This document shows, piece after piece, positions 4,040 through 64,000 of a DNA stretch of 64,000 bases. The DNA comes from Mobula hypostoma (taxonomy: Eukaryota). The number at the start of each line of letters is the position of its first letter. The stretch's first letter is position 1. The notes beneath the pieces were generated by a model. It was given only the letters and a program-made list of their open reading frames with translations, made no database searches and had not been told where the DNA came from. Both the position numbers and the translations under genes were made by a program. Location: positions 68,076,001 to 68,140,000 of the forward strand of contig NC_086109.1 in NCBI RefSeq assembly GCF_963921235.1, read 5' to 3'.

Positions 4040-6091
4040 TTGACGGTGGATATGCAATGGCAAGCATTTAAAGATTGCATGGATGAACTACAACAATTGT
4101 TCATCCCAGTTTGGCAAAAGAATAAATCAAGGAAGGTAGTGCACCCATGGCTGACAAGAGAAATTAGGGATAGTATCAATTCCAAAGAAGAAGCATACAA
4201 ATTAGCCAGAGAAAGTGGCTCACCTGAGGACTGGGAGAAATTCGGAGTTCAGCAGAGGAGGACAAAGGGCTTAATTAGGAAGGGGAAAAAAGATTATGAG
4301 AGAAAACTGGCAGGGAACATAAAAACGGACTGTAAAAGCTTTTATAGATATGTAGAAAGGAAAAGACTGGTAAAGACAAATGTAGGTCCCCTGCAGACAG
4401 AAACAGGTGAATTGATTATGGGGAGCAAGGACATGGCAGACCAATTGAATAATTACTTTGGTTCTGTCTTCACTAAGGAGGACATAAATAATCTTCCAGA
4501 AATAGTAGGGGACAGAGGGTCCAGTGAGATGGAGGAACTGAGCGAAATACATGTTAGTAGGGAAGTGGTGTTAGGTAAATTGAAGGGATTGAAGGCAGAT
4601 AAATCCCCAGGGCCGGATGGTCTGCATCCTAGAGTGCTTAAGGAAGTAGCCCAAGAAATAGTGGATGCATTAGTGATAATTTTTCAAAACTCGTTAGATT
4701 CTGGACTAGTTCCTGAGGATTGGAGGGTGGCTAATGTAACTCCACTTTTTAAAAAAGGAGGGAGAGAGAAACCGGGGAATTATAGACTGGTTAGCCTAAC
4801 GTCGGTGGTGGGGAAACTGCTGGAGTCAGTTATCAAGGATGTGATAACAGCACATTTGGAAAGCAGTGAAATGATCGGACAAAGTCAGCATGGATTTGTG
4901 AAAGGAAAATCATGTCTGACGAATCTCATAGAATTTTTTGAGGATGTAACTAGTAGAGTGGATAGGGGAGAACCAGTGGATGTGGTATATTTGGATTTTC
5001 AAAAGGCTTTTGACAAGGTCCCACACAGGAGATTAGTGTGCAAAATTAAAGCACACGGTATTGGGGGTAAGGTATTGGTGTGGGTGGAGAATTGGTTAGC
5101 AGACAGGAAGCAAAGAGTGGGAATAAACGGAACATTTTCAGAATGGCAGGCAGTGACTACTGGGGTACCGCAAGGCTCAGTGCTGGGACCCCAGTTGTTT
5201 ACAATATATATTAATGACTTGGATGAGGGAATTAAATGCAGCATCTCCAAGTTTGCGGATGACACGAAGATGGGTGGCAGTGTTAGCTGTGAGGAGGATG
5301 CTAAGAGGATGCAGGGTGACTTGGATAGGTTGGGTGAGTGGGCAAATTCATGGCAGATGCAAATTAATGTGGATAAATGTGAAGTTATCCACTTTGGTGG
5401 CAAAAATAGGAAAACAGATTATTATCTGAATGGTGGCCGATTAGGAAAAGGGGAGGTGCAACGAGACCTGAGTGTCATTATACACCAGTCATTGAAAGTG
5501 GGCATGCAGGTACAGCAGGCGGTGAAAAAGGCGAATGGTATGCTGGCATTTATAGCGAGAGGATTCGAGTACAGGAGCAGGGAGGTACTACTGCAGTTGT
5601 ACAAGGCCTTGGTGAGACCACACCTGGAGTATTGTGTGCAGTTTTGGTTCCCTAATCTGAGGAAAGACATCCTTGCCATAGAGGGAGTACAAAGAAGGTT
5701 CACCAGATTGATTCCTGGGATGGCAGGACTTTCATATGAAGAAAGACTGGATGAACTGGGCTTGTACTCGTTGGAATTTAGAAGATTGAGGGGGGATCTG
5801 ATTGAAATGTATAAAATCCTAAAGGGATTGGACAGGCTAGATGCAGGAAGATTGTTCCCGATGTTGGGGAAGTCCAGAACGAGGGGCCACAGTTTGAGGA
5901 TAGAGGGGAAGCCTTTTAGGACCGAGATTAGGAAAAACTTCTTCACACAGAGAGTGGTGAATCTGTGGAATTCTCTGCCACAGGAAACAGTTGAGGCCAG
6001 TTCATTGGCTATATTTAAGAGGGAGTTAGATATGGCCCTTGTGGCTACGGGGGTCAGGGGGTATGGAGGGAAGGCTGGGGCGGGGTTCTGA
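4040..6091 (+). CDS. CR1 ORF2 reverse transcriptase portion (683 aa open frame)
   Basis: KSPGPDG, QHGF, DFQKAFDKV, GVPQGSVLGP, FADD, RPHLEYCVQFW, TRGH; ends at the native stop before the 3' UTR. Confidence 0.93.
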   Translation: MTVDMQWQAFKDCMDELQQLFIPVWQKNKSRKVVHPWLTREIRDSINSKEEAYKLARESGSPEDWEKFGVQQRRTKGLIRKGKKDYERKLAGNIKTDCKSFYRYVERKRLVKTNVGPLQTETGELIMGSKDMADQLNNYFGSVFTKEDINNLPEIVGDRGSSEMEELSEIHVSREVVLGKLKGLKADKSPGPDGLHPRVLKEVAQEIVDALVIIFQNSLDSGLVPEDWRVANVTPLFKKGGREKPGNYRLVSLTSVVGKLLESVIKDVITAHLESSEMIGQSQHGFVKGKSCLTNLIEFFEDVTSRVDRGEPVDVVYLDFQKAFDKVPHRRLVCKIKAHGIGGKVLVWVENWLADRKQRVGINGTFSEWQAVTTGVPQGSVLGPQLFTIYINDLDEGIKCSISKFADDTKMGGSVSCEEDAKRMQGDLDRLGEWANSWQMQINVDKCEVIHFGGKNRKTDYYLNGGRLGKGEVQRDLSVIIHQSLKVGMQVQQAVKKANGMLAFIARGFEYRSREVLLQLYKALVRPHLEYCVQFWFPNLRKDILAIEGVQRRFTRLIPGMAGLSYEERLDELGLYSLEFRRLRGDLIEMYKILKGLDRLDAGRLFPMLGKSRTRGHSLRIEGKPFRTEIRKNFFTQRVVNLWNSLPQETVEASSLAIFKRELDMALVATGVRGYGGKAGAGF

Positions 6092-11756: not shown

Positions 11757-12427
11757 TGCAGGTACAGCAGGCAGTGAAGAAAGCTAATGGCATGCTGGCC
11801 TTCATAGCATGGAGAGTTGAGTACAGGAGCAAAGAGGTCCTTCTGCAGTTGTACAGGGCCCTGGTGAGACCACACCTGGAGTACTGTGTGCAGTTTTGGT
11901 TTCCAAATTTGAGGAAGGACATTCTTGCTATTGAGGGAGTGCAGCCTAGGTTCACAAGGTTAATTCCCGGGATGGCGGGACCATCATATGTTGAAAGATT
12001 GGAGTGACTGGGCTTGTATGCACTGGAATTTAGAAGGATGAGAGGGGATCTGACTGAAACATATAAGATTATTAAGGGATTGGACACGCTAGAGGCAGGA
12101 AACATGTTCCCGATGTTGGGGGAGTCCAGAACCAGAGGTCACAGTTTAAGAATAAGGGGTAGGCCATTTAGAACGGAGTTGAGGAAGAACTTTTTCACCC
12201 AGAGAGTTGTGGATCTGTGGAATGCTCAGAAGGCAGTGGAGGCCAATTCTCTGGATGCTTTCAAGAAAGAGTTAGATAGAGCTCTTAAAGATAGTGGTGT
12301 CAAGGGATATGGGGAGAAGGCAGGAACGGAGTACTGATTGTGGATGATCAGACATGATCACAGTGAATGGCAGTGCTGGCTCGAAGGGCCAAATGGCCTA
12401 CCCCTGCACCTATTGTCTGTTGTCTAT
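11757..12427 (+). mobile_element. CR1 3' fragment inserted in the Gypsy RNase H region
   Basis: QVQQAVKKANGMLAFI...TRGH...YGEKAG, 3' UTR, and (CTATTGT)n-like tail (different subfamily from the 6.2 kb copy); Gypsy frame ITNHQPL abuts it. Confidence 0.93.
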
Positions 12428-26195: not shown

Positions 26196-26332
26196 CGTAG
26201 CTGGGGAAGGTAGTGAGGATAAACGCTCCCAATGGCTTTTGCCTCAAATAGACCTGATAACCAAGTTCAACTCCTAGCCTTCACGTGTGGCTTAGCTACT
26301 AAGCCTGGTGGAACCATATCTACTGACAGGAG
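26196..26332 (+). ncRNA. Candidate HDV-like self-cleaving ribozyme (variant; probably decayed in this copy)
   Basis: P1 GTAGCTGG/TTAGCTAC; P2 CTCCT(A)/(C)AGGAG; P3 GCC/GGC; L3 TTCACGTGT; J1/4 AA; P4 TGGT-GGA-ACCA; J4/2 CTGA. Confidence 0.55.
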
Positions 26333-26722
26333 AAGGGGCAAAGGTGGGTTACCGGCACCTTAAAACCAATGACTTCAGGCAGATGGGACTCATCAGCTAT
26401 AGTTGGCAGCTCCTCCAGGAGAAGCAAAACTTTGATCTATAATCTCTGCTGCCTTGCAGCTATACCCACTCATGGAGAAGGCTTTGGGAGTAAACCCCGA
26501 AGAAAAATCCAGAGCTGGAATCTCTAAGGCAGTCCTATGTTGAGTTCAACACTCATTGGCAACTCCTTCGACACTGCTGGTGCCAAACTGTAGCAGTGTC
26601 TGCCATTCCTTTGGATTCATCATCTGTGTGGAGAGGGGGAGCCTACTGCATAGGCAACAGCTTGCTCTCCACATGGTACTGCTCTGGCTTGCATACCACC
26701 TAGACAGCTGGCACGTAACAAC
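26197..26722 (+). mobile_element. Non-coding RTE-like element (5' UTR-derived) beginning with an HDV-like fold
   Basis: RTE-leader-like motifs (ggcagctcctccaggagaagcaaaac, taaaccccga), aacaac end, no ORF. Confidence 0.6.
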
Positions 26723-47228: not shown

Positions 47229-48237
47229 ATGGAAATAAGAAAGCACCACTGCTGAGCCTGTGGAAGAGAGGGGGGCAACGCGCGGCTCTCCTACACGTGC
47301 GCTTGGCGGCGATGCTGACGCCGGGCCTCGCGCGGGTGAAGCGGCAAATATGATAAGGATTCTGGAAGAGGTAAGGGAAGTCCAAAAAGATATAAAACAG
47401 CAACTCAATGATATAAAGTCAGAGCTCGCCACCGTCAATCAGAAAATAGCGGTGGCAGAGACTCGAATTGAGAAGGTGGAAGATTGCGTGCAAAACGTGG
47501 AACAAATACTAAGTAAGACGATAAAATTATTAAATCAACAGGAAAGTAAATTGTTTGACCAGGAGGGAAGATCGCGACGGAAAAATTTCAGGATTTATAA
47601 TGTTCCCGAAGGAGCGGAGGGACTGTCGATGATGGACTTTGTAGACAAGCTGCTGCGGGAAGCGCTGGAGATTCCCCAGACTACGGAGATTGAAGTTGAG
47701 AGGGCACATCGTTAGCTCGTCCAGCGGCCTCCCGGAGACGGACAAAGTAAACCACACTCAATAGTACTTAAGTTCCTTTGATTCAAGAGCAAGGCGGAGA
47801 TTCTATGAGGGGCCTGGGGTAAGTAGAGGGTTTTTTGGAACAGGATGTTAATATACTTTGATCATGATTACTTCCCCCCCCCCCACCCCCCCGGCGGTCC
47901 TACAGAAACGGAAGGAATATTCCCAAGCGAAACGAATATTAAAGCAAGAAAAGATTAAATTCCAGACCCCGTACCCTGCTAAACTGAGGGTATTTTACCA
48001 AGAAGGGATGTGACTGTACAAGATGGTGGAGGAGGCGACTACAGACATGAACAACAGAGGACTGTCCATTAGTGTGGTCAAACCAAGGGAAAGTCTGGCT
48101 GAGCAGTTGTCCCGAGCTGCTTGGGAAATAGTAAGAGAACCTAGAAGCAGGGGACGGGAGCAGGGCGAGAGAAGGATATTAGGAAGAGACTGTCAGTTCT
48201 CCGAGGGCAGCCCTCACCTCCTCCAGAAGAGCCATAA
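47229..48237 (+). pseudogene. L1 ORF1p (coiled coil-RRM-CTD), disrupted
   Basis: ORF 47260-47715 with heptad region and IEVERAHR; downstream FDHDY and FQTPYPAKLRVF in shifted frames. Confidence 0.85.
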
Positions 48238-50477
48238 GATTTGGCTAACTTTAAAAGTGCTGATAAACTAAACAAGCAAAAATAGACAGTGATATGCCTA
48301 TCTCGAGAAATACGTGTTATAATGTGGATTTTATATTACTCAATTTTTAAAAATTCATTTATTCATTCCTTTTTCCCCACCTAAATGAGAATATATACAT
48401 GGGAGGAATACACAGAAATAATTTCTGTGTAATGGACATTGTTTCTTTTACTTACTTTTATAGGTACTGCAACGGGGGCCCTCAACCCACAGGTAGAAGG
48501 GGCTAACCCCCACGGCTAGATTTTTCTTCTAGCCTATCCCAGGGTCATCTAGAGACCCCAGCCTTGGAATTACACCTTCGTTACCTTTTTAAAAATTATT
48601 CGCATTTCTTGGCTCTTATTTGTTGAGGGAGTACCTCGATTAAGTTATATTCTGCAAATTTCAATGATATACTAACAGATAAATACACATGGCAAAGTAC
48701 AAAGTAAAATTAATTTCTTTTAATGTTAATGGGCTGTTGAATCCAGTCAAGCGCAGTAAAATTCTATCAAAAATGAAAAAAGAACAAGCCCAAGTAGTAT
48801 ATTTACAGGAAACTCACTTAAGTGATAATGAGCATGGAAAATTGAAGAGAATGGACTTCACTAATCTGTTTTTCTCCTCATATAAATCAGGACATAGAAG
48901 AGGAGTTGTTATTCTCATCTCAAGTAAGCTAAATTTTGAAAAAGTATTCGAAATGGGAGATAAGGAGGGCAGATATATTCTGGTAAGGGGAAATATAGAT
49001 GGAAATCCAGTTACTTTATTAAATATATATGCACACCCAGGAGGTGATATTAGTTTCCTCCAAAAAAGTACTAATATTATGGTAACAGAAACTGAAGGTC
49101 TCTTGATATGTGGGGGAGAGTTAAATTTACAATTACAACCAAGGTTAGTCTCTTCCAATAGAAAAACTTATGAAACAAAGTCCTTACATAAGAAAGTTAA
49201 CGCTCTTTTTGAGGATGTTTTTGCATGACATATGGAGGAACCTTTTCCCCGACAGAAGGGATTACACTCATTATTCTGCCCCCCATTCCGTATATACAAG
49301 AATAGACTATTTCATAACATTTGGAAAAGCTAGAGACAAGATAATCACCTTTGGAATTGGGACAATAGATGTAAGTGACTATGCAACTATATATTTATCT
49401 GTTGATTTTGACCTACAGCCAAAGAATACTATTTGGGAACTAAATTCAAGTCGACTCAATGATCCCTATTTTAAGGAACAAATTAAAAAAGAAATTGGTC
49501 TTTACTTAGAATTCAATGATAATGGAGAGGTTTCACCTCCCATTCTATGGGATACTCTGAAAGCTGCCTTAAGAGGGAAAATCATAGTGATATCTTCATA
49601 TAAGAAAAAAATAAGGAATAGAACATTAGAGGAATTACAAAATAAGCTGAAGGGACTAGAAAAAAGACACAAATTGAGTTTGGCACAGGATACACTAGAG
49701 GAAATTTTAAAAAATAGGAATGAAATTAATAGTTTGGCAACACAAGAAATTAGAAAAAAATTAATGTTTCTGAAACAGAGACACTATGAAAGTGGATCTA
49801 AATCTATGAAAATACTGGCGTGGAAACTAAAAAAAAGATAGCAGAAAATACAATTCATAGAATAAGGGATCCAAGAACAGAAGTGATAAAAAATAAGCTA
49901 AGTGAAATTCAAGAAGGTTTTGAAATGTTTCACAAAACTTTATATTCCAAAGTTCCAGGGGGAAGCATAACCCAAATTGACACCTTCCTGAATTCTTTAG
50001 AGTTACCCACTTTAAACAAGGAACAAAATAGAACGATGACTGCTGACATAACTGAAGCTGAACTAAAAACTGCAATTAGTAGGCTTAAATTAAGCAAGTC
50101 ACCAGGATCAGATGGATATACGACAGAGTGGTATAAAGAGTTTAGAAGTGAGTTAATTCCTGTTTTACTCCCCACACTGAACTGGGCCCTGAGAAGGGCG
50201 CAAATGCCACCCAGCTGGAAGGAGGCGATAATCTCAGCTATACCGAAACAAGGCAAAGATAAAATGGAAGGTGGGTCATTTAGACCAATATCTGTTCTTA
50301 ATGTGGATTACAAAATATTTACTTCCATCATGACCAAATGATTAGAAGGGTTTCTACCCACACTGATACATAATGATCACAAACAACAGGAATTCTGCAG
50401 ATGCTGGAAATTCAAGCAGCACACATCAAAGTTGCTGGTGAACGCAGCAGGCCAGGCAGCATCTCTAGGAAGAGGTA

Positions 50478-50515
50478 CAGTCGACGTTTCAGGCTGAGAC
50501 CCTTCGTCAGGACTA
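50478..50515 (-). ncRNA. Minimal type-I hammerhead ribozyme motif (inverted pLTR)
   Basis: Minus strand TAGTC-CTGACGA-AGG gtctcag CCT-GAAA-CG-TC|GACTG. Confidence 0.85.
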
Positions 50516-51040
50516 ACTGAAGGAAGAGTTAGTAAGAGACTTGAAAGCTCTGTCCGCCAGAGAAAGCAGGATCTCCCAGTGGCCACACGTTTCAATTCTA
50601 CATCCCATTCCCATTCTGACATGTCTATCCACGGCCTCCTCTGCTGTAAAGATGAAGCCACACTCAGGTTGGAGGAACAACACCTTATATTCCGTCTGGG
50701 TAGCCTCCAACCTGATGGCATGAACATCGACTTCTTTAACTTCCGCTAATGCCCCGCCTCCCCCTCGTACCCCATCCATTATTTATTTTTATACACACGT
50801 TCTTTCTCTCACTCTCCTTTTTCTCCCTCTGTCCCTCTGACTGCACCCCTTGCCCATCCTCTGGGTTCCCCTCCCCCGTCTTTCTCCTCGGGCCTCCTGT
50901 CCCATGATCCTCTCGTATCCCCTTTGCCAATCACCTGTCCAGCTCTTGGCTCCATCCCTCCCCCTCCTGTCTTCTCCTATTATTTTGGATCTCCCCCTCC
51001 CCCTCCCACTTTCAAATTCCTTACTAACTCTTCCTTCAGT

Positions 51041-51078
51041 TAGTCCTGACGAAGGGTATCGGCCTGAAACGTCGACTG
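51041..51078 (+). ncRNA. Minimal type-I hammerhead ribozyme motif (PLE pLTR)
   Basis: (T)AGTC-CTGACGA-AGG gtatcgg CCT-GAAA-CG-TC|GACT(G); predicted cleavage after C51073; palindromic ACGT helix III. Confidence 0.85.
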
Positions 51079-53959
51079 TACCTATTCCTAGAGATGCTGC
51101 CTGGCCTGCTGTGTTCACCAGCAACTTTGATATGTGTTACATAATGACCAGACAGGTTTTATACAACAACGCCAAACACGAGACAATATACGAAGGACAC
51201 TTCACATTATGGATCATATTAAAAAAATGAAATTGAAGCAATAGTGATAAGTGTGGACACTGAAAAGGCATTTGGTTCGGTTAACTGGAATTTTCTTTAC
51301 AGAATTTTATATAGGTTTGGTCTACATGACAATTATTAAAACTATACAGGCACTATATGATAATACTACTGCCAAGATTAAAATCAATGGATATTTATCT
51401 AATAGTTTTACCCTAGAAAGGGGCACGAGACAGGGCTGTGCATGGCCACTGCTACTCTTCGCATTATATCTGGAACCATTAGCTCAATACATCAGACAAA
51501 ATGAAAATATCAGGGGAATTACTATTAAAGGGACAGAGCATTAATTAGCCTGTTACGCGGATGACACTTTGATCTGTCTAGGGCAACCAACATACTGTTT
51601 ACCTAAATTGATGCAACTCTGAACAATATGGCCAATTATCAGGATATAAGATCAACATAGATAAAACCCAACTACTTTCATATAACTATAGGCCACCAAG
51701 AGAAATTGAAAGTAGATATCCTTGGGCATGGCAAACAGAATCCATCAAATATTGGGGCATCATGATGCCAAAAGATTTGGCAAAATTATCAGAGTGCAAC
51801 TATCAGCATATATATAAAAAAATTAAGGAAGATATAACAAGATGGAACCTAATTCCTTTTCTTGGTCTCAGTTCAAGGATTGAATCTATTAAAATGAATA
51901 TACTGCCCAGACTACTATATCTCTTTCAGACCCTACCAATAGAGATTAATCAAAATCAATTCAATGAATGGAATAAGATGCTATCAAGCTATATATGGCA
52001 AGGTAAAAGGCCTAGGGTTTGTCTCAAAACTTTGCAATTAGCCAAGGAAAAGGGGGGGGTGGGGCCTACCTTCTCTTAGAGATGATTATTTTTCAGCACA
52101 GTTGAGAGCCGTGATATGCTGGTGCAACCCATCATGTGGCGCTCAATGGAAAAACATTGAGGAGAGGATACCTTCCATCCCATACAAGCAATTTTGGCTG
52201 ATAACAACCTACAACATAAATAATATTGACAACCCGTGGGTGAAATGGACTCTTAAAATATGGAAAACTATTACAAAAGAATATAAACGAGAGAGAGACA
52301 TTGCAATTCTTAAATGGTGTGCATATGACTCAGATTTTACGCCGAATAAACTGGATGCTAGATTTAAGGACTGGACAGCTAAAGGAATAACAGCTATTTG
52401 CAATATAATGAAAGAAGCAACACTGTTCAGTTTTGAAATGCTCAAAGAGAAACACTTATTAGAAAAACAAGACTTTTACCACTATTTACAGATGTAATGG
52501 TATGTTAATAGAATGGTTAAAAATGTAACCAAGGCAAGTACATGCCTGATAGAGCTATTTAGAAAATAATAGCTCTATAATTCAGACAACGGTAGTAGAA
52601 TAATTTCAAGTGTTTATAAGGCTTTGTCAAATCTTAAAACACATTCGACTTCATACATTAAAACAAAATGGGAGAAGGAAGGAGGGATAATAATATCTGA
52701 GGAAGACTGGACAATAATATGGAGGTATCAATGGAAGTGTACCAGTTCACAGAAATGGAGGGAGTTTGGGTGGAAAAACTTAATAAGATATTTTATTACA
52801 CCCTCTCAGAAATCCCATTATAGTAGTAACTCCCCTGCTTGCTGGAGAAATTGTGGAAATCAAAATGCAAATGATTATCATATTTTCTGGGAATGCCCCG
52901 TTATCAAAGATTATTGGAGTGGGATACATAATGCCCTACAAGACATCTTTAAATGTGAAATACCCTTAGAGAGTAAGACCATATATTTTGGGTATATACC
53001 TCAAGAATGGTTGAAAATAGATAAATATTTAATGAATGTACTGCTGGTGGCTGGTAAAAAGACCCTTACCAGGAAATGGTTATCTCAGGAGAACCCAACT
53101 TTAAATGTATGGATGGAAATTACAATGGACATTTACAAAATGGAGAAGATAACAGCATCTGTTAATCATAAGTTGGAACAATTTTATTCATACTGGAAAA
53201 ATGGTTTAACTATATAACACCTCATAGGCCTGATTTTATTCTCACAAGTCAATGAATATGTTGTAAAAAAAATCACTCCCTACTCTGTACATAGTTTTCT
53301 TCTTTCAATTATTCTTTCTTTCCTCTCCTTTCTGTAAGTGTACACCTCAGATAAATATTATGTGATTTGTGACAAATATGATTATGTGATATATATGTAC
53401 AGTATCTGAAATACATCTTATGGAAATTTTTGTTTGATGATGAAATTCAATAAAGAATAAATTACAAAAAAAATCTGGTGGTATGGTTTATATTCACTTA
53501 TGCACATTTTTTTCATGAGGTTAAACATAAAGTCAATAGATTTAATTTCTGTGACTTTAGGAAGCATGAAATAAGCTGATTTCTGACTGTGATCACATAC
53601 AAGCATATACGTATTTGGGGAGTTGACAGACTGATCAGCAAATTAAATGCTATATTGGTTTATAATTGTCATATTAGAATCAGATTCATTATAACTGACA
53701 TATGATGTGAAATGTGTTACTTTGTGCACACAAATACAGTGCAAAGATCATTAATTACAATAACTTATAAAAATAAATGACTAAACCGTGAAATTAAAAA
53801 TAAAGAGTAACAGGGTAGTGTCCATGGGTTCATGGAACGTTCAGAAATTTAGGGGTAGAGTTAAGACAAATGGAGATTTGTAGGAATCAGTGTATCAAGC
53901 AATTGGAGAACATGGGTATGAGTTGGGTAGGGTGAAGGGGATAGATACCATTATATAGC

Positions 53960-54713: not shown

Positions 54714-56469
54714 CCAAAAACTATTAAAACAGTAATTTTTAATGGCTATGTCATGACTAGGAGAGTTAGAGCTTGAAATGTAGAAATCACTACAAGATAG
54801 TTTATAGATATATTAAAAAATTAAAGTGGTGCAGAATGCAAAGGGATTAAAGTTTTGACAAAGACTATACATTGTACTCCAGGTATAGTCACATCAAAGC
54901 CCAAAGGCAAAACTACCTTACTTTTTTATTTCCATTCCTCTTATAATAAAAGCCAACGTGGTGATTGTTCTCATTCTATCTGCATGCTAACTTCCAGTGT
55001 TTTTGTACAAGGACATCAGACTTTCTATAAACACCATAATTCAATATTATAGGTTATTTAAATGCTATTATCTTTATTCTTCCTAGCAAGGTAGACAAAA
55101 CAGTTATTCACAGTATACTCCATCTGCTATAAGTTTGCCTGCTTAGTTAACCTGTCTATATCCCTTTGTAGACCATATGTGTCCTTACAACTTTCCCACC
55201 TATCAGTGTGTCATCAGAAAGCTTTAATATTTTTTCATCTAAAAGATAATATTAGATTGTAAAATGTTGAAGCCCTGAAATGACCTGTATGACAGTTCAC
55301 AGGTTTATTTTTGCTAAGCTTAAATTTACCTCTTAATTCATAATCTCTGCTTTCCATCATGTTAATATAAGAGGCTCAATAATATGTGCCCCTGTGTAAC
55401 AGTGACCTATGTGATAGCTTATTAAATAGATTCTGGAAATTTAAGTCCACTATATCTACTAGTTTTCCATTATTGATAATGTACATCCAGTTACATATTC
55501 AATAAACTCAACTGAATGTATGCCAAATTCAATTTTGCTTTCAAAAGGCCATATCAAGTTCACCTGACTCCTATTGACTATTTCTTAATTAAGGATTCCA
55601 ACATCAACCTCATGGTGGATGTTAGGAAACTTCACCTATAGTTCCCTGTTTCCTCTTGGAAAATCAAACAGTAATATTAATTAAGCACTGTTATTTTTAG
55701 AAAAAAAAATTACAGGAAATGGGTAGTGCTGGCAAGACCAGCATTTATCATTCATCTCTATTTGCTCTCAAGAATTTGGTGATGAGCTGTCTTGAACTGT
55801 TGAATCAATAGACAGCTAAAGTATTAATTTTTTCATCACTAGCTTTCATCTGGTACTTCGCCAATGGCAGAATTTATGAATTTGGTCCAAGGTAATGTTT
55901 GTCACTGCCGTTGTTAAAGTAGGTGAATCAATGTGCAGGATTTATTTTGGTTCTACTGCAAATAGTCTCTGGCAGAATGAGCCTTCTTGACTATTGCACC
56001 AAGTGTAATGATGTTTTACTTGGCTCTGTAATGCAGTGTAGGTGCTGGCAACCACAGGCCCCATTGAAAACAGATTGGTCACAGCTGTAACAGGCTGTGA
56101 TTTAAGCTCAGAAATTGGAACACAGGCACATGATATTTAGGCTTGATGAACTTGTGCATCAGTTCAGTGGGAATCACTATAGAATTTGATGGAATTAACT
56201 TTTAAATATGCGTTAGAACATTTATCTCCTTGCTACCTTTAAAACATTTCTTTCCATTTCCAATAAACGCCCATTGAGACAACTGACTACAGTGGAATTA
56301 CCCTAACAAACGTCATTGGGAAGATATTAGAATCTGTCACTGAAGATGAGATTATTAATGAGAAATTGAACTGACAAATTAATTTGAAAATGTTACTACA
56401 ATTGTGAACCATAGGAACCAGATGATGTAATATCTTTGAATTCCAAGTATTTTTATAGCCATCAATAAT

Positions 56470-56507
56470 TACTGCACTTGATCTTAGCCGAAAGGCCAAG
56501 AAGCAAG
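56470..56507 (-). pseudogene. RNU2: U2 snRNA 5' fragment (nt ~1-38) retrocopy
   Basis: Minus strand cttgcttcttggcctttcggctaagatcaagtgcagta vs vertebrate U2 atcgcttctcggccttttggctaagatcaagtgtagta: 33/38 identical. Confidence 0.92.
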
Positions 56508-56724
56508 ATGCTGGCCGGCGGTGTAGTGGCATCAGCACCAGACTTTGAGGTGAGTTGTCATGGGTTCGAATCTGGCCAGCTCCTTTGTACACGTTCGATC
56601 TGTGCTGGGCTGAGTGTCGAGCTAGCAACACAGCCTTGTAAAAAACAGAAAGATGCTAAAGAAAAGGCAAGGTTGCCATCTGAGGTGCCACCTGATGCGC
56701 CCCCAGGCACAGAAAAGAACAACA
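56508..56724 (+). mobile_element. tRNA-derived SINE with RTE-like (AAC)n tail
   Basis: A box CGGTGTAGTGG (56519-56529), B box GGTTCGAATC (56563-56572), tail gaacaaca; TSD aataatta shared with the U2 fragment. Confidence 0.85.
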
Positions 56725-56734
56725 AATAATTAAA

Positions 56735-57960
56735 AAGAACATGGAACCAGTAGTATATTCAACCCTTGATGATCATTTACATTCAATGGTCTATTCTAGC
56801 ATTCTCCCTCAATCCTTTGATCCCTCTCATCTTTAAAAAAATCTAACTCCTTCCTGACGATATTTAATGATTTGCTTCCATTACTTTCCATGGTAGAGAA
56901 TTCCACAGCTTCACCACCTTCTGGGAGAAGAAGTTTCTCCTCTGGCTTACATCACTTAGCCAATATCCTTAGATGTTAACCCTTACCTGGACTTTGCACC
57001 ACCAGGAACATTCTTCCTACATTTTGATTAGCTTGTTCATATTAGAATGTTGTAGGCTTACTTGAGATCCCCTCTAATTCGAGTTAACTTGATCGAACAC
57101 AAGCCTAAATGACCCAATTTCTTTTCATATGTACACCCTGCCATCCCTGGAATCAGTCTGGTAAACCTCTGCTGCACTCTCAATAGTGAGAACATTATTC
57201 CTCATATAAGGCAAGCAAAACTCTCCATGATACTCACAGTGTGGTCTCACTAAAGCCCTTTATAAGTGCACCAGGACACAATTGCTCCTCTATTCAAACC
57301 TTCTTGCTATGAAGGCCAAAGTACAATTTGCCTTTTTAGTTGCCCACTATACATACTTACCTCCGGCAACAGGTAGATGAAAGCTCCCAGGTCTCATTGC
57401 AGTCCCCCTTTTTTAAACTGTTACCATTCAGTTGATAATCTTCCTTCCTGCCATTATCATCAAAATGAAATACCCCACATCATACTACATATACTGTGTA
57501 ACTAACCACTCCCTCAACCTCTGTCCTAATTTACTCTTTCTCCTCAAACTCACTCTGCTGTCCTGTTCTATGTCATTTACAAAATTGCATCCGTATTGTA
57601 CTGTCTCAGTACTTTTATATTTGTGTGCTGTAGCACTTTTTTTATTCGCAGTTATTTTGTAAATAACACTAGTCTTTGCAGTTCTGGTCAGATGCTAAAT
57701 GCATTTCATTTGCTTTGCATCTGTACTCGGCACAATGACAATCAAGTTGAATGTAATCTAATCTAATCTAAAATTGGATACATTTCACTTGACTCCCTTG
57801 TCAAGTCATTAATATACTCTATATCATGAATAGTTGGGGTTCTATATCTGTTGTACCCCACTAGTCACTGCTGGCCACTCAGTAAAGGATCTATTTATTC
57901 CTACTGTTTGGATCCTGTTGACCAACCAAGATTCTGTCCACGTCAGCACCTTGTCCCCAG
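56735..57960 (-). mobile_element. Old CR1 fragment with nested Rex/Babar-type 3' UTR (about 57588-57770)
   Basis: tactcacagtgtggtctcactaaagcc (RPHCEY), agagaattccacag; the nested piece ends (AATCT)n with aaaattg on both sides. Confidence 0.75.
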
Positions 57961-58339
57961 ACCCCTACTCTTTAATTTTACATGGTAAACTCTGATGTAT
58001 TTGCTGCAATTAGCTAATAACTGAGAGAGGAAGAGATACGTAGGCAGTAGTAGGTGGACAATCATGTGAGGAGGCATAGGATTAGAATAGACATTGCTGT
58101 AGAACAATTGACCAATTGTCTCTTTCTGTACTGCAAGCTTCTCAGCAATTCCATCCATCTTGACTGAAAGACATCCAGTACATATCAAAATCATTGGTCA
58201 CAACAGTGGACTTTTATCTTATGGGTCAGTAAATATTGCAATCAAATAACAATACATCCTTCACAAAAATAAGTAGTATTGTACATGTAATTTTGTTAAC
58301 ATGTTAACATGTTAATTTTACTTTCTGCAAGAATTTGTT

Positions 58340-58860
58340 AGTTTCAATGTTATTTCATCAAATGGTTCCATTTTAATATCAGGGAATCTATATAGTATAC
58401 AACCAGAACTTTTTACTCTTTGCAGACATCCATGAAAACAGAAGAAATTCCCAAAGAATGAACCACAGAAAAATACTGGAACTCCAAAGCCCCTCTTCCC
58501 CCACCCCACACACAAGCAACTGCATTACATCAACCTCCCTCTCTCCCTCTTACCAATTACAGCAGAAAACATCAGAGCCCACTGCCCACCAAGCAAAAGC
58601 AAAGCCCCCAAAGACAGACCATGATCTGCAGTTAACAAAAACTATTGTTTACCCGACAGTTCGACATGCCACAGGCTCTCTCCCTCCCTAACAAGTAACA
58701 GGGAGGAGTCATCCATTTCACAGCAAAAGAGAAGACTAACAAACAGTCGCTGTTATGATGTTACATTTTAATCTGCCACAACGCTTTTTATTCTGAGATT
58801 CTCCAACTCAAGAATCAGTAGCAAACTCTTCCCACCATCGAGAGAAAGACCACTCTCTGG
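58340..58860 (-). mobile_element. Non-coding retroposon family D
   Basis: Tail ctgatattaaaatggaaccatttga and body resemble 62738-63105. Confidence 0.6.
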
Positions 58861-59569
58861 TCTTATCTATTCATTTGAAGAAAATTTGTGGAATAAGAAT
58901 AGTAAAACCACCAAAGAATGCACACAAGCAAATTTTAGCCAGTACTATAAAGAAAATGCAGCCACATCAAACTCCAGTAGGATGCCCTTGTGAAATTAAT
59001 ATTGCTTGAATACTTGAACACAAAGCCCTCAGTCTGCAACATTTTCTTCTACACCAGTGTACCAGCGTAGGAGGAGTTCAAGAGCATAACTTGAAAAGTA
59101 AGTCATATTTACAATTGGTTACCACGAAAAGGTAATTCACTGGGGCTTTGGAAATCATACATATGTGTACATTTATAACCGGAATAATTAAGGCACTGAA
59201 ACTTTGATTTTTTTTTGTTCTGATATTGATTTTACAGAGCCCTATTTTTCTAATGTTTTACTTACTCATAAGGAATTAACAGCCATGGTTGAAGCCCACA
59301 GCTAAATCATTTTACCAGTTCCAATAGACTTAGATTTAGATTTTCCCCCAGTATGGAGACCATAAGCATAAGATCATCACTAATAAATCTGGAAAGGAAT
59401 TCAGTAGATTTGAAATTCACCACCACATGAAGTAATTTAAACACATGTTGGCTCCATTAAACAATAAAGGGAATGTGAAGAAGGGAGAATGGAATGAAGG
59501 GTATATTGATACTGTTGGATAAAAAAAAAAGAATGAACAAAGACTCATGTGAAGCTTAAACATAAGCTG

Positions 59570-60985
59570 GTGTGAATTGGAATTGGAATTAGAATTGGGT
59601 TATTATTGTCACATGTGCCAAAATACAGTGTAAAGTTTGTCTCGCATACCACTCATACACATCAGGTTGCATTGAGGTTGTTACATACCCCGTAACTGGG
59701 TTGCCAAACCAGCAGAAATGGACCACTTAGTTGGAGTCTGGTTTACTAGAAACTAATGAAGTTTTATTAAAGAAATAAGTAACACAGTACTCTAATCGTA
59801 AGGATATAAATGCAACAGGTTAGCAATAATAAAACACACATGTACACAGAACTAGGGTAATAGGAATCAATCAAGCTCTTTTGTAGTCTAGGGGTAAAAT
59901 GATCAGTCTCAAGTGACGCAGAGTTCAGTTCAGCTTAGTACAGTTCGCAGTAATCGCTGTTGTGCCGTTGGAGAGAGAGAGAGAATGTAAATTTTGATTC
60001 AAACAGACCTTTGATGTTCTTCGCAGTTAGCTTTCGGGCGAACCCTCTTATATCTTCTCTGGTCACCGACTGTGACCCCTCCGTTCCGGATACGACCGTT
60101 CTTCTGCGGTGAACCCGGCACCCAGGCAAGGGCGGACACACACACCAGGTTCTCACCGATTGTCCCTTTCCACCCCGTGCGTCTATGGTCGGTTCCCACG
60201 ACCAGACCTCCAAACTCTCACCAACTTGTGGGGGCACACCGCTCTTCCAGGGTCTCGTTATCTCGTGATCTCGTGGTGTGTGTCGTGCCTTAGCGTACCT
60301 GTTCTTTTTATCCCCCTGCTGGGGTATCGCCTGTCCATCAAACTTCAAACAGTTCAGGTTCAAAGCAACCAGTCTGTTAATACTCGGAAATGTGTTTCTT
60401 CTCTCTTCTCTCTTATTAGCATTTTGAATGTTTCTCCATTGTCTCCCTTATCTCTCTCATCAGCATCAATCTTCTGATAACTTGGTTTGTCATCACAAGG
60501 TAGATCAAGGTAAAACAATAACAATGCAGAATAAAGTGTAAACTTTTAGAAGAGGAAGTGTAGTGCAGGTAAACAATAAAGTATCGGATCATAACGAGGT
60601 GGATTGCAAAATCAAAGTCCAGTTGTGATCTGTTGCTTTTACACTTTATTCAAAGATTATCTTTGAATAGAGTGCAAAAGCAACAGAGAAAGTGCCAGAT
60701 CATAATGAGGTAGATTGTGAGGTCAAGAAAACATTTTATCATACTAGGGAACCATTTAATAGTCCTTTAACAGTTCTTTGAGCCTGGTGATACTTGCTTT
60801 CAGGCTTTTGTTTCTTCTGCTCAACAGAAGAGAGAAGAGAGAATGTCCGAGATGGGAGGGGTCTTTGATTATGCTGGCTGCTGTACAGCGGCAGTGGAAA
60901 GTACTTCCAGAGTCCATGGGGAGAAGCTGGTTTCCGTGGTATGCTGAGCTGGGTCCACAACTCTCTGCAATTTCTTGTGATCATT
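59570..60985 (-). mobile_element. Rex1/Babar-type 3' end hosting a solo LTR
   Basis: (GAATTG)n tail at 59574; frameshifted DPSHLGHSLFSLL-like remnant at 60780-60870. Confidence 0.7.
59679..60497 (-). mobile_element. Solo LTR (819 bp)
   Basis: TGT...ACA termini; exact 4-bp TSD aggt (59675-59678, 60498-60501); AATAAA on the minus strand; CpG-rich, so young. Confidence 0.92.
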
Positions 60986-61463
60986 GACAGCAATATAAAG
61001 TCTAGAGCCTACAATAAGCTCTCTTGTACCACTTTTTTTTTTCGGTGAATTTTATCTAAAACACCAAGCCTCCTAGCAATAGGATTAGACACCTACTGAC
61101 AGTGGAGAGTCCACCCATGATGGCCAGCAGCACCCACTAGACTGAACCCTTGCCAACTACTCTGTTCTACTCTAATTACACTCATTGCCATTTATTTTTG
61201 TGCACAAATTCCACCTAAATACTATTCCCTTGAGTTAGATTGTAACCCAACTTGAAGATGAACCCATGTTACATCTGTGTATATTTCATGTTAGTACTAA
61301 TGTTTTCCTGGAATCCTTCATAAACCAATGACATTGACGGTTTCACACTACATGATTCCACCTTGCTATTATAAAGTGGGACTTTTGATTGTAATTTGTT
61401 GCTTTCTTTAAACACTCACTGTGTGACTAGGGCTTTCTTGTAATGGTGTATATGAAAGCAATG

Positions 61464-62064
61464 CTCAGATTCAGATTTATTTATCATGTACATCAAAACA
61501 TTCAGTGATATGCATCATTTGTATTAACAAGCAACACAATCTAGGGATGTGCTGGGGGCAGCCTACAAGTGTAGCCACACAATTTGGCACCAATATTGTA
61601 TGCCAAAAATACTTGGTAGAACAAGGGAGCACATGGCAAAACAGAACACAGCAAGCAACAAAACAACAACAGCAAAATAAGACCCTGTCCTCCCTCCCAG
61701 CCACCCACACACACAGATAGTCCTTCATCTCTAGGAAAAGCCTCCAGCCATTGAGTATCCACTTCCAGACTTCCGATCAACTTCCGGGATCTGATCTTCA
61801 GTATTGACTCCTGGACGAACCAGTGATGGGATCCTGAAATCCAGGCTCAAACTTTGGGCGTACCAACTGACTGCCTCTTGTGCCTCCTCAAGTCTGACCT
61901 CTAATTTCTCCATATCCCTGTCCCTATACTTTAATCTGACCTCTAACATCCCCAATTCCGCTGTCTCTGAACTCTAACCTGACTGCCAACTCCCCTCTCT
62001 GGCCCCAAGATCAACTAAGCCTGAGCCACAGTCTCAATGGAGACGGCAGCTTGGCGCCATGTTG
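61464..62064 (-). mobile_element. Non-coding retroposon family C, full copy
   Basis: Head CAACATGGCGCC; tail gataaataaatctgaatctga. Confidence 0.75.
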
Positions 62065-62737
62065 AAATTATTGGGAAATCTGACAGGTCACCTCTAAGAC
62101 TAACACAATGCTCAGGCATCTTTCAGATTTTGCAGAGTGTGCTGAAACTGACAGTGAATGCTTTCTTCTACATTTAGTCGCAATACCCATTCCATAGAAG
62201 TCACAGTTGTGATACCACTGGCAGCCCTCCCTCAGCATCATGTGCAGTCAAGGCAGGTGAGAGATGCATGAGCTTGTACTGTACTGTTCCTCTCTTTCTG
62301 TAGGACTGTGTTCTGCTTGCAAGTGGCATCACTCTGCTTGTGCAAGGCAACATCTTCTTCATGAATTCCTTTGCTTCTGTGGCACCACAAGCTGCTCAAT
62401 GGAAACAATTCTTTGCACATTGAGACACCATCTGCTTGCTGGTGGCATATTGCTCCTGAACTTCAAGTTCTGTGGTAGAGGGCAGACTTCAACCTGGTTG
62501 CATCTATCAGGTGAGACTGCATAAAAGCAGCAAGATCATATGACTTCCTGGGTCTTATTAGATCCTGGAAGAGCTTGGAAATGGATTCCCTCACCTCCTC
62601 ACCTAGACCGAACTGTGTTCATGATCCGTGTGTGCATCCACACTAGTCTTGTCATAAAGATTTCATCTTCAGACTCCTCATGGTCATTCTCTGGCCAGTG
62701 TGGCTGGGTGGAGCTTGGAAAAAGGGACCCAACAGAC

Positions 62738-63105
62738 TTTTAACATCGTAAATCAGCGAGTTGTTTGTTATGTCTCCTCCCCCCCCCCATTGTGAAACGG
62801 GGACACCCCTTTATCAGGGAGAGAAGGAGAGCCTGTGGCATGTCGTATTATCAGGTGAACGAGTAGTCTTTGGGGTACTGCAAGTCTGTCTCTTTATTGA
62901 TGCTTTGCTGCACGTTTGAGTGCTCAGTGGAGGGTGCTGTTGCTTTTTTGCTGTTAAACTCCAAGTGGATGCATTGAGGGACATTGAGTATTTTTTGTCA
63001 ATATCCTATCTTAGGACACTTCAGTTTTCTTGAGGGATGAATGTCACATGTGTGTATGTGTATACATTTCTCTGACACTAAATGCACCTATTGAAACCTA
63101 TTGGA
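62738..63105 (+). mobile_element. Retroposon family D copy whose middle is replaced by a local 105-bp duplication
   Basis: Tail cctattgaaacctattg; body interrupted at 62948-63052. Confidence 0.65.
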
Positions 63106-63639
63106 TCTCCTGCATCATATTTCCCAGTGTTAAAGTTGTATCTCCCTGTGAAATGTATCTCACTAACTTTACCTGCCCACCCCTTACAGTTCCATTTCCT
63201 GAGGAGGTTCTCTGGATTATCAGATGTAATGTGCACTGTGAACTTTATCAACATCACTTTCACCACACTCCTGGCCTCCCTCCTTTTCCATCTTCTCTTC
63301 TGGGAAGGGCTTATCCCAACACAGTGTAAAGACAAAACAGAAAATAAAGGTGAAATTAACTTTCACTCCTAAGTTTTAAGATAGTCAAAGCAGATATGAT
63401 CAAAATGCTCATAAGCTTTTTGCCCTCAATGCAGAGGTAGTTGGGACTTAATGGTCCTTCTGCTCATAAGATGTGGGACAGTCTCTTGCAGATGTAGGGG
63501 CACTACATGTGCAAGATGACCTCGCTTGTACCACTTGCTGTTAAACTCCAAGTGGATGCATTGAGAGACATTGAGTATTTTTTGTCAATATGCTATCTTA
63601 GGACACTTCAGTTTTCTTGAGGGATGAATGTCACATGTG
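62948..63639 (+). repeat. 105-bp direct repeat (62948-63052 and 63535-63639)
   Basis: Two mismatches, 587-bp offset. Confidence 0.97.
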
Positions 63640-64000
63640 AGGTAGTGTATAATGGTGCAGTATGGACCATTAGTGACAGAATGATAGTACATTATTTCCA
63701 TTGATAATAAGCTCGCCTTGATATATCCTGAGAGATCATAAAATTTCCTCTGATCTGCTACATTACTGGGAGGATTCTCACCCATGTAGACTCCTTGTGT
63801 CATCCCTGGCCATGTTATTTCATTGGTGGCCTCTCTTGGACCCCCACTGCATTCAGAGCCCCTTCAGGTTGGGTTACTTATTGTCTCAGTTACCGAGACT
63901 CCGATGTCCCTCTGAATTAAACATGGAGGCCTCGCTCTCTCTCCTGGAGCCTTTCCCTCCTCCACAAGCATTCCACTATGCTGCATCTGTGAGCATACAC

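What the first reader, a model, noticed from the sequence alone, without database searches (positions are those of the whole stretch)
56464..56732. Inverted U2 snRNA 5' end fused head-to-head to a SINE within a single TSD
Seen: aataatta (56464-56471 and 56725-56732) flanks [antisense U2 nt ~38 to 1] + [sense full-length tRNA-SINE with AAC tail]. The TSD's last TA is also U2 sequence (2-nt microhomology). Established: snRNA-LINE chimeras such as U6-L1 are normally co-oriented template switches; twin priming inverts part of the same RNA; U2 near nt 37-38 (branch-point recognition region) is targeted by Keno and Utopia elements. Inference: twin priming on two different RNAs, where the second nick primed reverse transcription on U2 to its 5' end and the two cDNAs were joined, probably by RTE machinery. 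Alternatively it is a composite SINE family with an antisense-U2 leader.
Basis: partly seen in the sequence, partly recalled or inferred. Interest (0 to 1): 0.72.

Follow-up and report, generated by a model that had tools for sequence, protein, structure and literature searches.

The report
Flipped U2 piece joined to SINE
A 38-base copy of the front of the U2 spliceosomal RNA sits backwards against the front of a SINE-like jumping element inside one 8-base target duplication in a ray genome, most likely because two RNAs were copied from the two ends of one DNA break; this is already described for human L1.

Summary
Rfam places U2 nt 1-38 on the minus strand at 56507..56470, with 33 of 38 bases matching. 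Two bases further on, at 56510, a plus-strand tRNA-headed element starts at its acceptor stem. It ends in a CAA-CAA tail at 56724. Exact aataatta copies flank the pair (about 0.1% by chance in this window).

It is not new. Doucet et al. 2015 (PMC4476161) describe inverted, 3'-truncated U1/U2/U5/U6-L1 chimeras in one TSD formed by twin priming. Law and Burns 2026 (PMC13174262) describe antisense 5S (1-45) and tRNA (1-37) pieces.

What is new here is the SINE partner, the host (a ray) and hints of RTE-type machinery.

Public collections gave no other SINE copy.

The scan noted a similar head-to-head RTE-LINE/tRNA-SINE chimera elsewhere in this genome (s1-143373). It also noted a Tx1 LINE with a U2(1-40) leader (s1-142899). 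I checked neither.

Verdict: a real, ordinary-to-modest new member of a known kind.

The parts
56450..56454 (+). T5 run at P-14..P-10 upstream of the 5' TSD, the position of the thymine stretch in the RTE-type insertion signature
   Evidence: sequence. Background is 11% for TTT in P-14..P-8 and 1.7% for T5 in P-16..P-6. The signature is described in PMC6007223.
56464..56471 (+). Left copy of the 8-bp target-site duplication aataatta. Its last two bases double as U2 nt 38-37.
   Evidence: Chance rate is 0.11%.
56470..56507 (-). Antisense U2 snRNA nt 1-38, 5'-complete and 3'-truncated at the end of the branch-point recognition sequence
56508..56509 (.). Two-base 'at' at the internal head-to-head junction. 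It is either filler or U2 nt 2-1 under a gapped alignment.
   Evidence: Read directly.
56510..56583 (+). tRNA-like head of the SINE-type element: acceptor arms at 56510-16 and 56574-80, A box at 56520-29, B box at 56562-72
   Evidence: RNA fold at -31.2 kcal/mol pairs the two arms. ARAGORN calls a cloverleaf at 56512-56583 only at an 80% threshold. There is no standard ARAGORN or Rfam tRNA call.
56584..56716 (+). Body of the SINE-type element. No recognised domain and no similar sequence elsewhere in the window.
   Evidence: Self-blastn.
56717..56725 (+). Microsatellite-like 3' tail gaa-caa-caa. Its last a overlaps the first base of the right TSD copy.
   Evidence: (CAA)n tails with TSDs that start with A are typical of animal RTE-related retroposons (PMC6007223).
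56725..56732 (+). Right copy of the 8-bp target-site duplication

Best explanation
This is a dead, one-off by-product of a single target-primed reverse transcription event that used two RNAs. Inferred steps: a LINE endonuclease nicked the bottom strand at ...catc|aataatta. The freed T-rich 3' end primed on the CAA-CAA tail of the SINE RNA, and the cDNA ran to the SINE's first base. The top strand was nicked 8 bp downstream. Its 3' end (...atta) paired through TA with U2 snRNA nt 37-38, in the single-stranded branch-point recognition region, and a second cDNA ran to U2 nt 1. The two cDNA 3' ends were then joined with 0-2 bases of filler, and gap repair produced the 8-bp duplication. The machinery is more likely RTE-type than L1-type, at roughly 55:35. 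The insert has no function, because the SINE's own pol III promoter would not transcribe the U2 leader. It is probably old: the U2 piece is about 13% diverged.
For: Shown here:
- U2 nt 1-38 lies antisense at 56507..56470.
- The element starts at its tRNA-like acceptor stem at 56510.
- Both parts stop at or within 2 nt of their RNA 5' ends, which is the mark of run-off reverse transcription. No U2 promoter or 3' sequence is present.
- One exact 8-mer flanks the pair and neither part alone. The chance rate is 0.11%.
- There is a TA overlap at the U2/target junction.
- CAA tail, TSD starting with A, T5 at P-14..P-10 and an 8-bp TSD fit the RTE-related insertion signature.

Precedent:
- Inverted 3'-truncated U1/U2/U5/U6-L1 chimeras within one TSD, with junction complementarity and breakpoints in single-stranded loops, are explained by twin priming (PMC4476161).
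- Antisense 5S nt 1-45 and tRNA nt 1-37 pieces on L1 are reported (PMC13174262).
- 'Dual priming' by two RNAs has been proposed (PMC2837659).
- Unchecked scan notes report twin-primed inserts and an RTE-LINE/tRNA-SINE head-to-head chimera in this same genome.
Against: - No empty orthologous site was seen and no second copy of the element was obtained, so both single-event origin and one-off status rest on one locus.
- The 8-mer is AT-only in a flank that is 65-71% AT.
- The microhomology is only 2 nt.
- Both CpGs of the U2 piece have decayed, while the SINE keeps 7 CpGs (CpG o/e 0.48 against 0.29 for the window). Without a family consensus I cannot show that the two parts are the same age.
- The SINE tail does not match the RTE-like element in the window better than chance (p about 0.1).
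- The A-rich end could be a decayed poly(A) tail of an L1-dependent element.
Confidence: 0.6

Rival explanations
1. This is a copy of a propagating composite, or a 5'-transduced copy. A source SINE lies head-to-head against a U2 gene or pseudogene, and read-through transcripts that start in antisense U2 are retrotransposed as one RNA. The same junction would then recur at many sites.
For: A single TSD around both parts is also what one composite RNA would give. 5' extensions from master-copy flanks are documented for SINEU-2 (PMC4494074).
Against: The leader lies upstream of the A and B boxes, so type-2 pol III transcription, which starts near tRNA +1 (established knowledge), would not include it. 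It needs a source SINE inserted exactly at U2 nt 1, and a transcript or a truncation that ends exactly at nt 38. No second copy was found in the window, but the genome was not searched.
Confidence: 0.12
2. Two independent events. A 3'-truncated U2 retropseudogene and a SINE landed next to each other at different times, and the aataatta pair is either a chance AT-rich match or the TSD of one part only.
For: 3'-truncated snRNA pseudogenes primed in single-stranded loops are common, at least in mammals (PMC4476161). The 8-mer has low complexity in a 65-71% AT flank. Both CpGs of the U2 piece are lost while the SINE keeps seven.
Against: The chance 8-mer rate is about 1e-3 even with slack. Neither part has a direct repeat of its own. 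A later U2 insert would have had to land exactly between an intact TSD and an intact SINE first base, with no loss or duplication. If U2 came first, the SINE's TSD could not lie beyond the U2 piece.
Confidence: 0.1
3. A remnant of a U2 gene or pseudogene broken at nt 38|39 by a U2-targeting LINE (Keno or Utopia), or a piece of a Tx1 LINE that carries a U2(1-40) leader, with the SINE added later.
For: The U2 piece ends at nt 38, exactly where Utopia and Keno 3' junctions lie: downstream U2 starts at nt 39 (PMC4640811). An unchecked scan note reports a Tx1 LINE with a U2 1-40 leader in this genome (s1-142899).
Against: There is no U2 nt 39-188 within 20 kb to the left or 7.5 kb to the right at E <= 5. 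There is no LINE ORF on the minus strand next to nt 38, and the flank ORF has no Pfam match. The only LINE to the left (49820-53217) is on the plus strand and ends 3 kb away. This reading leaves the flanking 8-mer and the exact nt 1 to SINE nt 1 abutment unexplained. Nt 33-38 is also simply the single-stranded region where internal priming is expected.
Confidence: 0.05

Closest known systems
Inverted snRNA/L1 chimeras formed by twin priming (Doucet et al. 2015, MBE, PMC4476161; 'Group IV, twin')
   Same: The snRNA is 5'-complete and 3'-truncated. It lies in the opposite orientation to the retroposon, head-to-head, with one TSD around both. There is short complementarity between the snRNA breakpoint and the target, and the breakpoint is in a single-stranded functional loop. 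That paper's list includes one U2/L1 case.
   Different: The partner here is a full-length tRNA-headed SINE-type element, not a 5'-truncated L1. The host is a ray, not a mammal. The target (tc|aata) is not a clean L1 TT|AAAA site, and the tail is CAA-type, which points to non-L1 (RTE-like) machinery.
Antisense small-RNA/L1 chimeras in the mammalian catalogue of Law and Burns 2026 (PMC13174262)
   Same: The small RNA contributes only its first ~37-45 nt (5S nt 1-45, tRNA nt 1-37), antisense to the retroelement. The authors attribute this to reverse transcription from both ends of the TPRT break.
   Different: Those cases were verified with multi-species alignments that show empty sites, which this one was not. 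The partner there is L1, and U2-with-SINE in antisense is not among the passages I read.
Dual priming (Srikanta et al. 2010, PMC2837659)
   Same: Two different RNAs are primed at the bottom-strand and top-strand nicks of one target. The internal junction may lack microhomology.
   Different: It was proposed for two polyadenylated RNAs primed at their tails. Here the second RNA is primed internally, with no tail.
U6/L1 template-switch or RtcB-ligation chimeras
   Same: An snRNA and a retroposon lie within one TSD.
   Different: Those are co-oriented, with a full-length U6 upstream of the L1. This one is inverted and 3'-truncated.
SINEU (snRNA-headed SINEs of crocodilians, Kojima 2015, PMC4494074)
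   Same: U2-derived sequence sits at the 5' end of a short retroposon.
   Different: SINEU heads are in sense orientation and are part of a repeated family. Here the piece is antisense and lies outside the transcribed unit.

Membership tests
Inverted snRNA/retroposon chimera by twin priming (Doucet 2015) | snRNA segment is 5'-complete and 3'-truncated | tested here: met
   U2 model positions 1-38 align and homology stops at position 39.
Inverted snRNA/retroposon chimera by twin priming (Doucet 2015) | snRNA in opposite orientation, with its 5' end facing the retroposon's 5' end | tested here: met
   U2 is on the minus strand at 56507..56470, and the element is on the plus strand from 56510.
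Inverted snRNA/retroposon chimera by twin priming (Doucet 2015) | One TSD flanks the whole chimera | tested here: met
   Exact 8-mer at 56464-71 and 56725-32, with a 0.11% chance rate. Neither part has its own repeat.
Inverted snRNA/retroposon chimera by twin priming (Doucet 2015) | Complementarity between the snRNA breakpoint and the target 3' end | tested here: met
   A 2-nt TA is shared by the TSD end and U2 nt 37-38. This is weak on its own.
Inverted snRNA/retroposon chimera by twin priming (Doucet 2015) | Breakpoint in a single-stranded segment of the snRNA | not tested
   Nt 33-38 is the branch-point recognition sequence between stem I and stem IIa. This rests on established knowledge, not on a computation here.
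Inverted snRNA/retroposon chimera by twin priming (Doucet 2015) | Orthologous empty site lacks both parts | not testable with these tools
There is no paralogous empty site.
RTE-mobilised SINE | 3' end shared with an RTE-clade LINE of the same genome | tested here: inconclusive
   Only the motif GGCAC...AACAAC is shared with the RTE-like element that ends at 26722. Alignment p is about 0.1. No autonomous RTE was compared.
RTE-mobilised SINE | Microsatellite-like (CAA)n end, TSD starting with A, T stretch near P-10, TSD <= 13 bp (PMC6007223) | tested here: met
   The tail is caa-caa, P1 is a, ttttt lies at P-14..P-10 and the TSD is 8 bp. These are single-locus features with 2-11% background.
tRNA-derived SINE | Internal pol III A and B boxes in a tRNA-like head | tested here: met
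   A box at 56520-29, B box at 56562-72 and a perfect 7-bp acceptor stem. The cloverleaf appears only at a relaxed ARAGORN threshold.
tRNA-derived SINE | Many dispersed copies in the genome | not testable with these tools
   The window holds no other copy. Protein-word, metagenome and viral scans gave none.
SINEU (snRNA-headed SINE) | Sense snRNA head forming the 5' end of a repeated element | tested here: not met
   The U2 piece is antisense to the element.
Keno/Utopia insertion in a U2 gene | U2 nt 39 onward on the far side of an RT-encoding element in the same orientation | tested here: not met
   There is no further U2 match in 36000-56469 or 56508-64000. There is no minus-strand LINE ORF next to nt 38.
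U6/L1-type template-switch chimera | snRNA co-oriented with and upstream of the retroposon | tested here: not met
   The orientation is opposite.

The most novel reading that the evidence does not exclude
RTE-clade machinery, which has one ORF and no ORF1p, routinely performs two-RNA twin priming in this ray. It captures the 5' ends of abundant small RNAs. The nt-38 breakpoint would then mark an accessible U2 site that U2-targeting Keno and Utopia elements also exploit. That would give a second, non-L1 system in which inverted small-RNA chimeras record how the second strand is primed.
Probability: 0.15. Interest if true: 0.5.

Novelty: new member of a known kind. Interest (0 to 1): 0.3.

Why it matters
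If it holds, the locus shows that priming a second, unrelated RNA from the top-strand nick is not peculiar to mammalian L1. It would also occur with a SINE template, in a cartilaginous fish, and possibly with RTE-type enzymes. Such chimeras are natural records of second-strand priming, the least understood step of target-primed reverse transcription. A single unverified locus adds an example rather than a principle. The value would come from a genome-wide census.

Tried and rejected
- **Reads:** Read laying on 56064-57263 with runs from three organisms, to see the empty site and the paralogue depth.
- **Other SINE copies:** self-blastn of the window found none. A word search with the SINE's 72-aa pseudo-ORF found no candidate. 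A metagenome scan with back-translated peptides gave 600 pattern hits, none related. An exact 21-mer from the head, searched in the metagenomes, gave three chance matches that I read and rejected. A 21-mer searched in viral contigs gave none. The findings index searched by sequence was blank.
- **Orthologous contigs through flank ORFs:** ten ATG ORFs were looked up, and none is in the protein collection.
- **Paralogous empty site:** the right-flank repeat starts at 56770 and does not span the site.
- **Split U2 gene or Keno remnant:** rejected.
- **Shared LINE tail:** the SINE tail against the RTE-like element at 26196-26722 is not significant.
- **HOX context:** suggested by two weak lncRNA hits, but no homeobox motif is present, so I treat them as chance.

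Full report
**What is there**

The plus strand reads as follows:
- A T5 run at 56450-54.
- aataatta at 56464-71.
- The reverse complement of U2 snRNA, from nt 38 down to nt 1, at 56470-56507.
- Two bases, 'at'.
- An element that starts at 56510 and ends in gaa-caa-caa at about 56724.
- aataatta again at 56725-32.

Rfam cmscan finds U2 (RF00004) on the minus strand at 43.2 bits, E = 1.1e-6 for the 3-kb search. That is just under the gathering score of 46, because only model positions 1-38 really align, at 33 of 38 identities. Two of the five differences are CpG-to-TpG changes against the vertebrate U2 sequence as I recall it. Position 39 mismatches and the remainder is low-probability filler. 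By simple counting, a 38-mer with 5 or fewer mismatches is expected about 1e-5 times in a genome of 3.5 Gb (a size I assumed). The piece is therefore genuinely derived from U2.

**The element**

- Its first seven bases (56510-16) pair perfectly with 56574-80, like a tRNA acceptor stem.
- An A box (56520-29) and a B box (56562-72) are present.
- ARAGORN calls a cloverleaf at 56512-56583 only at a relaxed threshold. The standard ARAGORN run and the Rfam tRNA model are silent.
- The architecture is a tRNA-like head, a body of about 130 nt and a microsatellite-like tail, which is that of a SINE.
- I could not show that it is repeated. The window holds no other copy.

**Is the flanking repeat more than chance?**

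At this spacing, with +-3 bases of slack on each side, an exact direct repeat of 8 nt or more occurs at 0.11% of positions in this window. The flanks are 65-71% A+T, which raises the local rate a little. Neither part has a direct repeat of its own. The repeat encloses the pair.

**Surroundings**

- The right flank from 56770 is an old repeat with two paralogues in the window. I read it as CR1-like. It does not span the site, so it gives no paralogous empty site.
- To the left there is no LINE ORF on the minus strand. The flank ORF has no Pfam match.
- A plus-strand L1/Tx1-like LINE lies at 49820-53217.
- No other U2 fragment exists in 36000-56469 or 56508-64000 at E <= 5.
- The piece is therefore not the stump of a U2 gene split by a U2-targeting LINE.

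**Mechanism**

The order of parts is what twin priming predicts when the second primer uses a different RNA. Both RNAs were copied to within 0-2 nt of their 5' ends. That points to run-off reverse transcription, not to DNA rearrangement. The last TA of the left TSD copy is also U2 nt 37-38, so the top-strand 3' end could pair there.

This geometry is already published:
- Doucet et al. 2015 list human U1/L1, U2/L1, U5/L1 and U6/L1 chimeras in which a 3'-truncated snRNA lies inverted against L1 inside one TSD. They report junction complementarity and breakpoints in single-stranded loops, and they explain them by twin priming (PMC4476161).
- Law and Burns 2026 report antisense 5S nt 1-45 and tRNA nt 1-37 pieces on L1 and draw the same conclusion (PMC13174262).
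- Srikanta et al. 2010 proposed 'dual priming' by two RNAs (PMC2837659).

**Position 38**

Utopia and Keno insert so that downstream U2 starts at nt 39 (PMC4640811). The breakpoint here coincides with that site. No LINE and no U2 remainder are present, and nt 33-38 is the single-stranded branch-point recognition sequence where internal priming is expected. I therefore treat the coincidence as probably structural, though worth a census.

**Which machinery?**

Nishiyama and Ohshima 2018 show several features of animal RTE-related retroposons (PMC6007223):
- They often end in (CAA)n.
- Their TSDs start with A.
- A T stretch lies near P-10.
- Their TSDs are mostly 13 bp or shorter.

This locus has all four. 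The background is 11% for TTT and 1.7% for T5 at that position.

The window's RTE-like non-coding element ends at 26722 in ...ggcac-gt-aacaac, and the SINE ends in ...ggcac-agaaaag-aacaacaa. The tails do not align better than chance, with p about 0.1. A decayed poly(A) tail and L1-type machinery remain possible. I put RTE against L1 at roughly 55:35.

**Composite family?**

A type-2 pol III promoter starts transcription near the tRNA-like +1 position (established knowledge). The 38-nt leader would then not be carried into new copies. That argues against a propagating family, but a read-through source locus is not excluded.

**What could not be done**

- The look-up of sequencing runs found the stretch in a second species with 56% of the 31-mers, which is about 1.9% divergence.
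- All attempts to fetch other SINE copies or orthologous contigs failed.
- The U2 piece is about 13% diverged, so the insertion is probably much older than the split from that second species. A more distant relative would be needed to see an empty site.

**Earlier notes of this scan (unchecked)**

- The genome is a ray.
- It holds twin-primed L1 and other inserts.
- It holds a head-to-head RTE-LINE/tRNA-SINE chimera in one 10-bp TSD (s1-143373).
- It holds a Tx1 LINE with a U2 1-40 leader (s1-142899).
- It holds an abundant ribozyme-headed RTE retroposon (s1-141912).

These agree with the reading but are not independent tests.

**Verdict**

- Observation: confirmed.
- Best explanation: a single two-RNA twin-priming event, confidence 0.6.
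- Novelty: a new member of a known kind.
- Interest: modest.

Noticed in passing
window 49820-53217 (+), interrupted at about 50367-51147: A degraded L1/Tx1-like LINE ORF2 with weak RVT_1 and zf-RVT Pfam matches. It lies 3 kb from the finding, on the other strand relative to the U2 piece, and is not connected to it.
   Followed up: partly
window 56770-57449 (paralogues at 5408-6031 and 11796-12350, opposite strand): An old repeat at about 66% identity to two other copies. Its minus-strand ORF at 57058-57195 carries an RFTRLIPGM...RGDL motif that I recall from CR1-type ORF2 C-termini. The chimera landed about 40 bp beyond its end.
   Followed up: partly
This is the same kind of AAC/CAA end as the SINE, and a T-rich flank follows it. 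The overall tail similarity to the SINE is not significant.
   Followed up: partly
window 60624-60694: A short hairpin matched weakly by five unrelated miRNA-precursor models on both strands (E 0.04-3.3, all far below their gathering scores). It is probably a palindromic repeat rather than a miRNA.
   Followed up: no
window 48103-48227 (-) and 61649-61819 (-): Weak Rfam hits to HOTTIP_3 (E 0.69) and HOXA11-AS1_6 (E 4.6). No homeobox WFQNRR-type motif occurs in any frame of the window, so these look like chance.
   Followed up: yes
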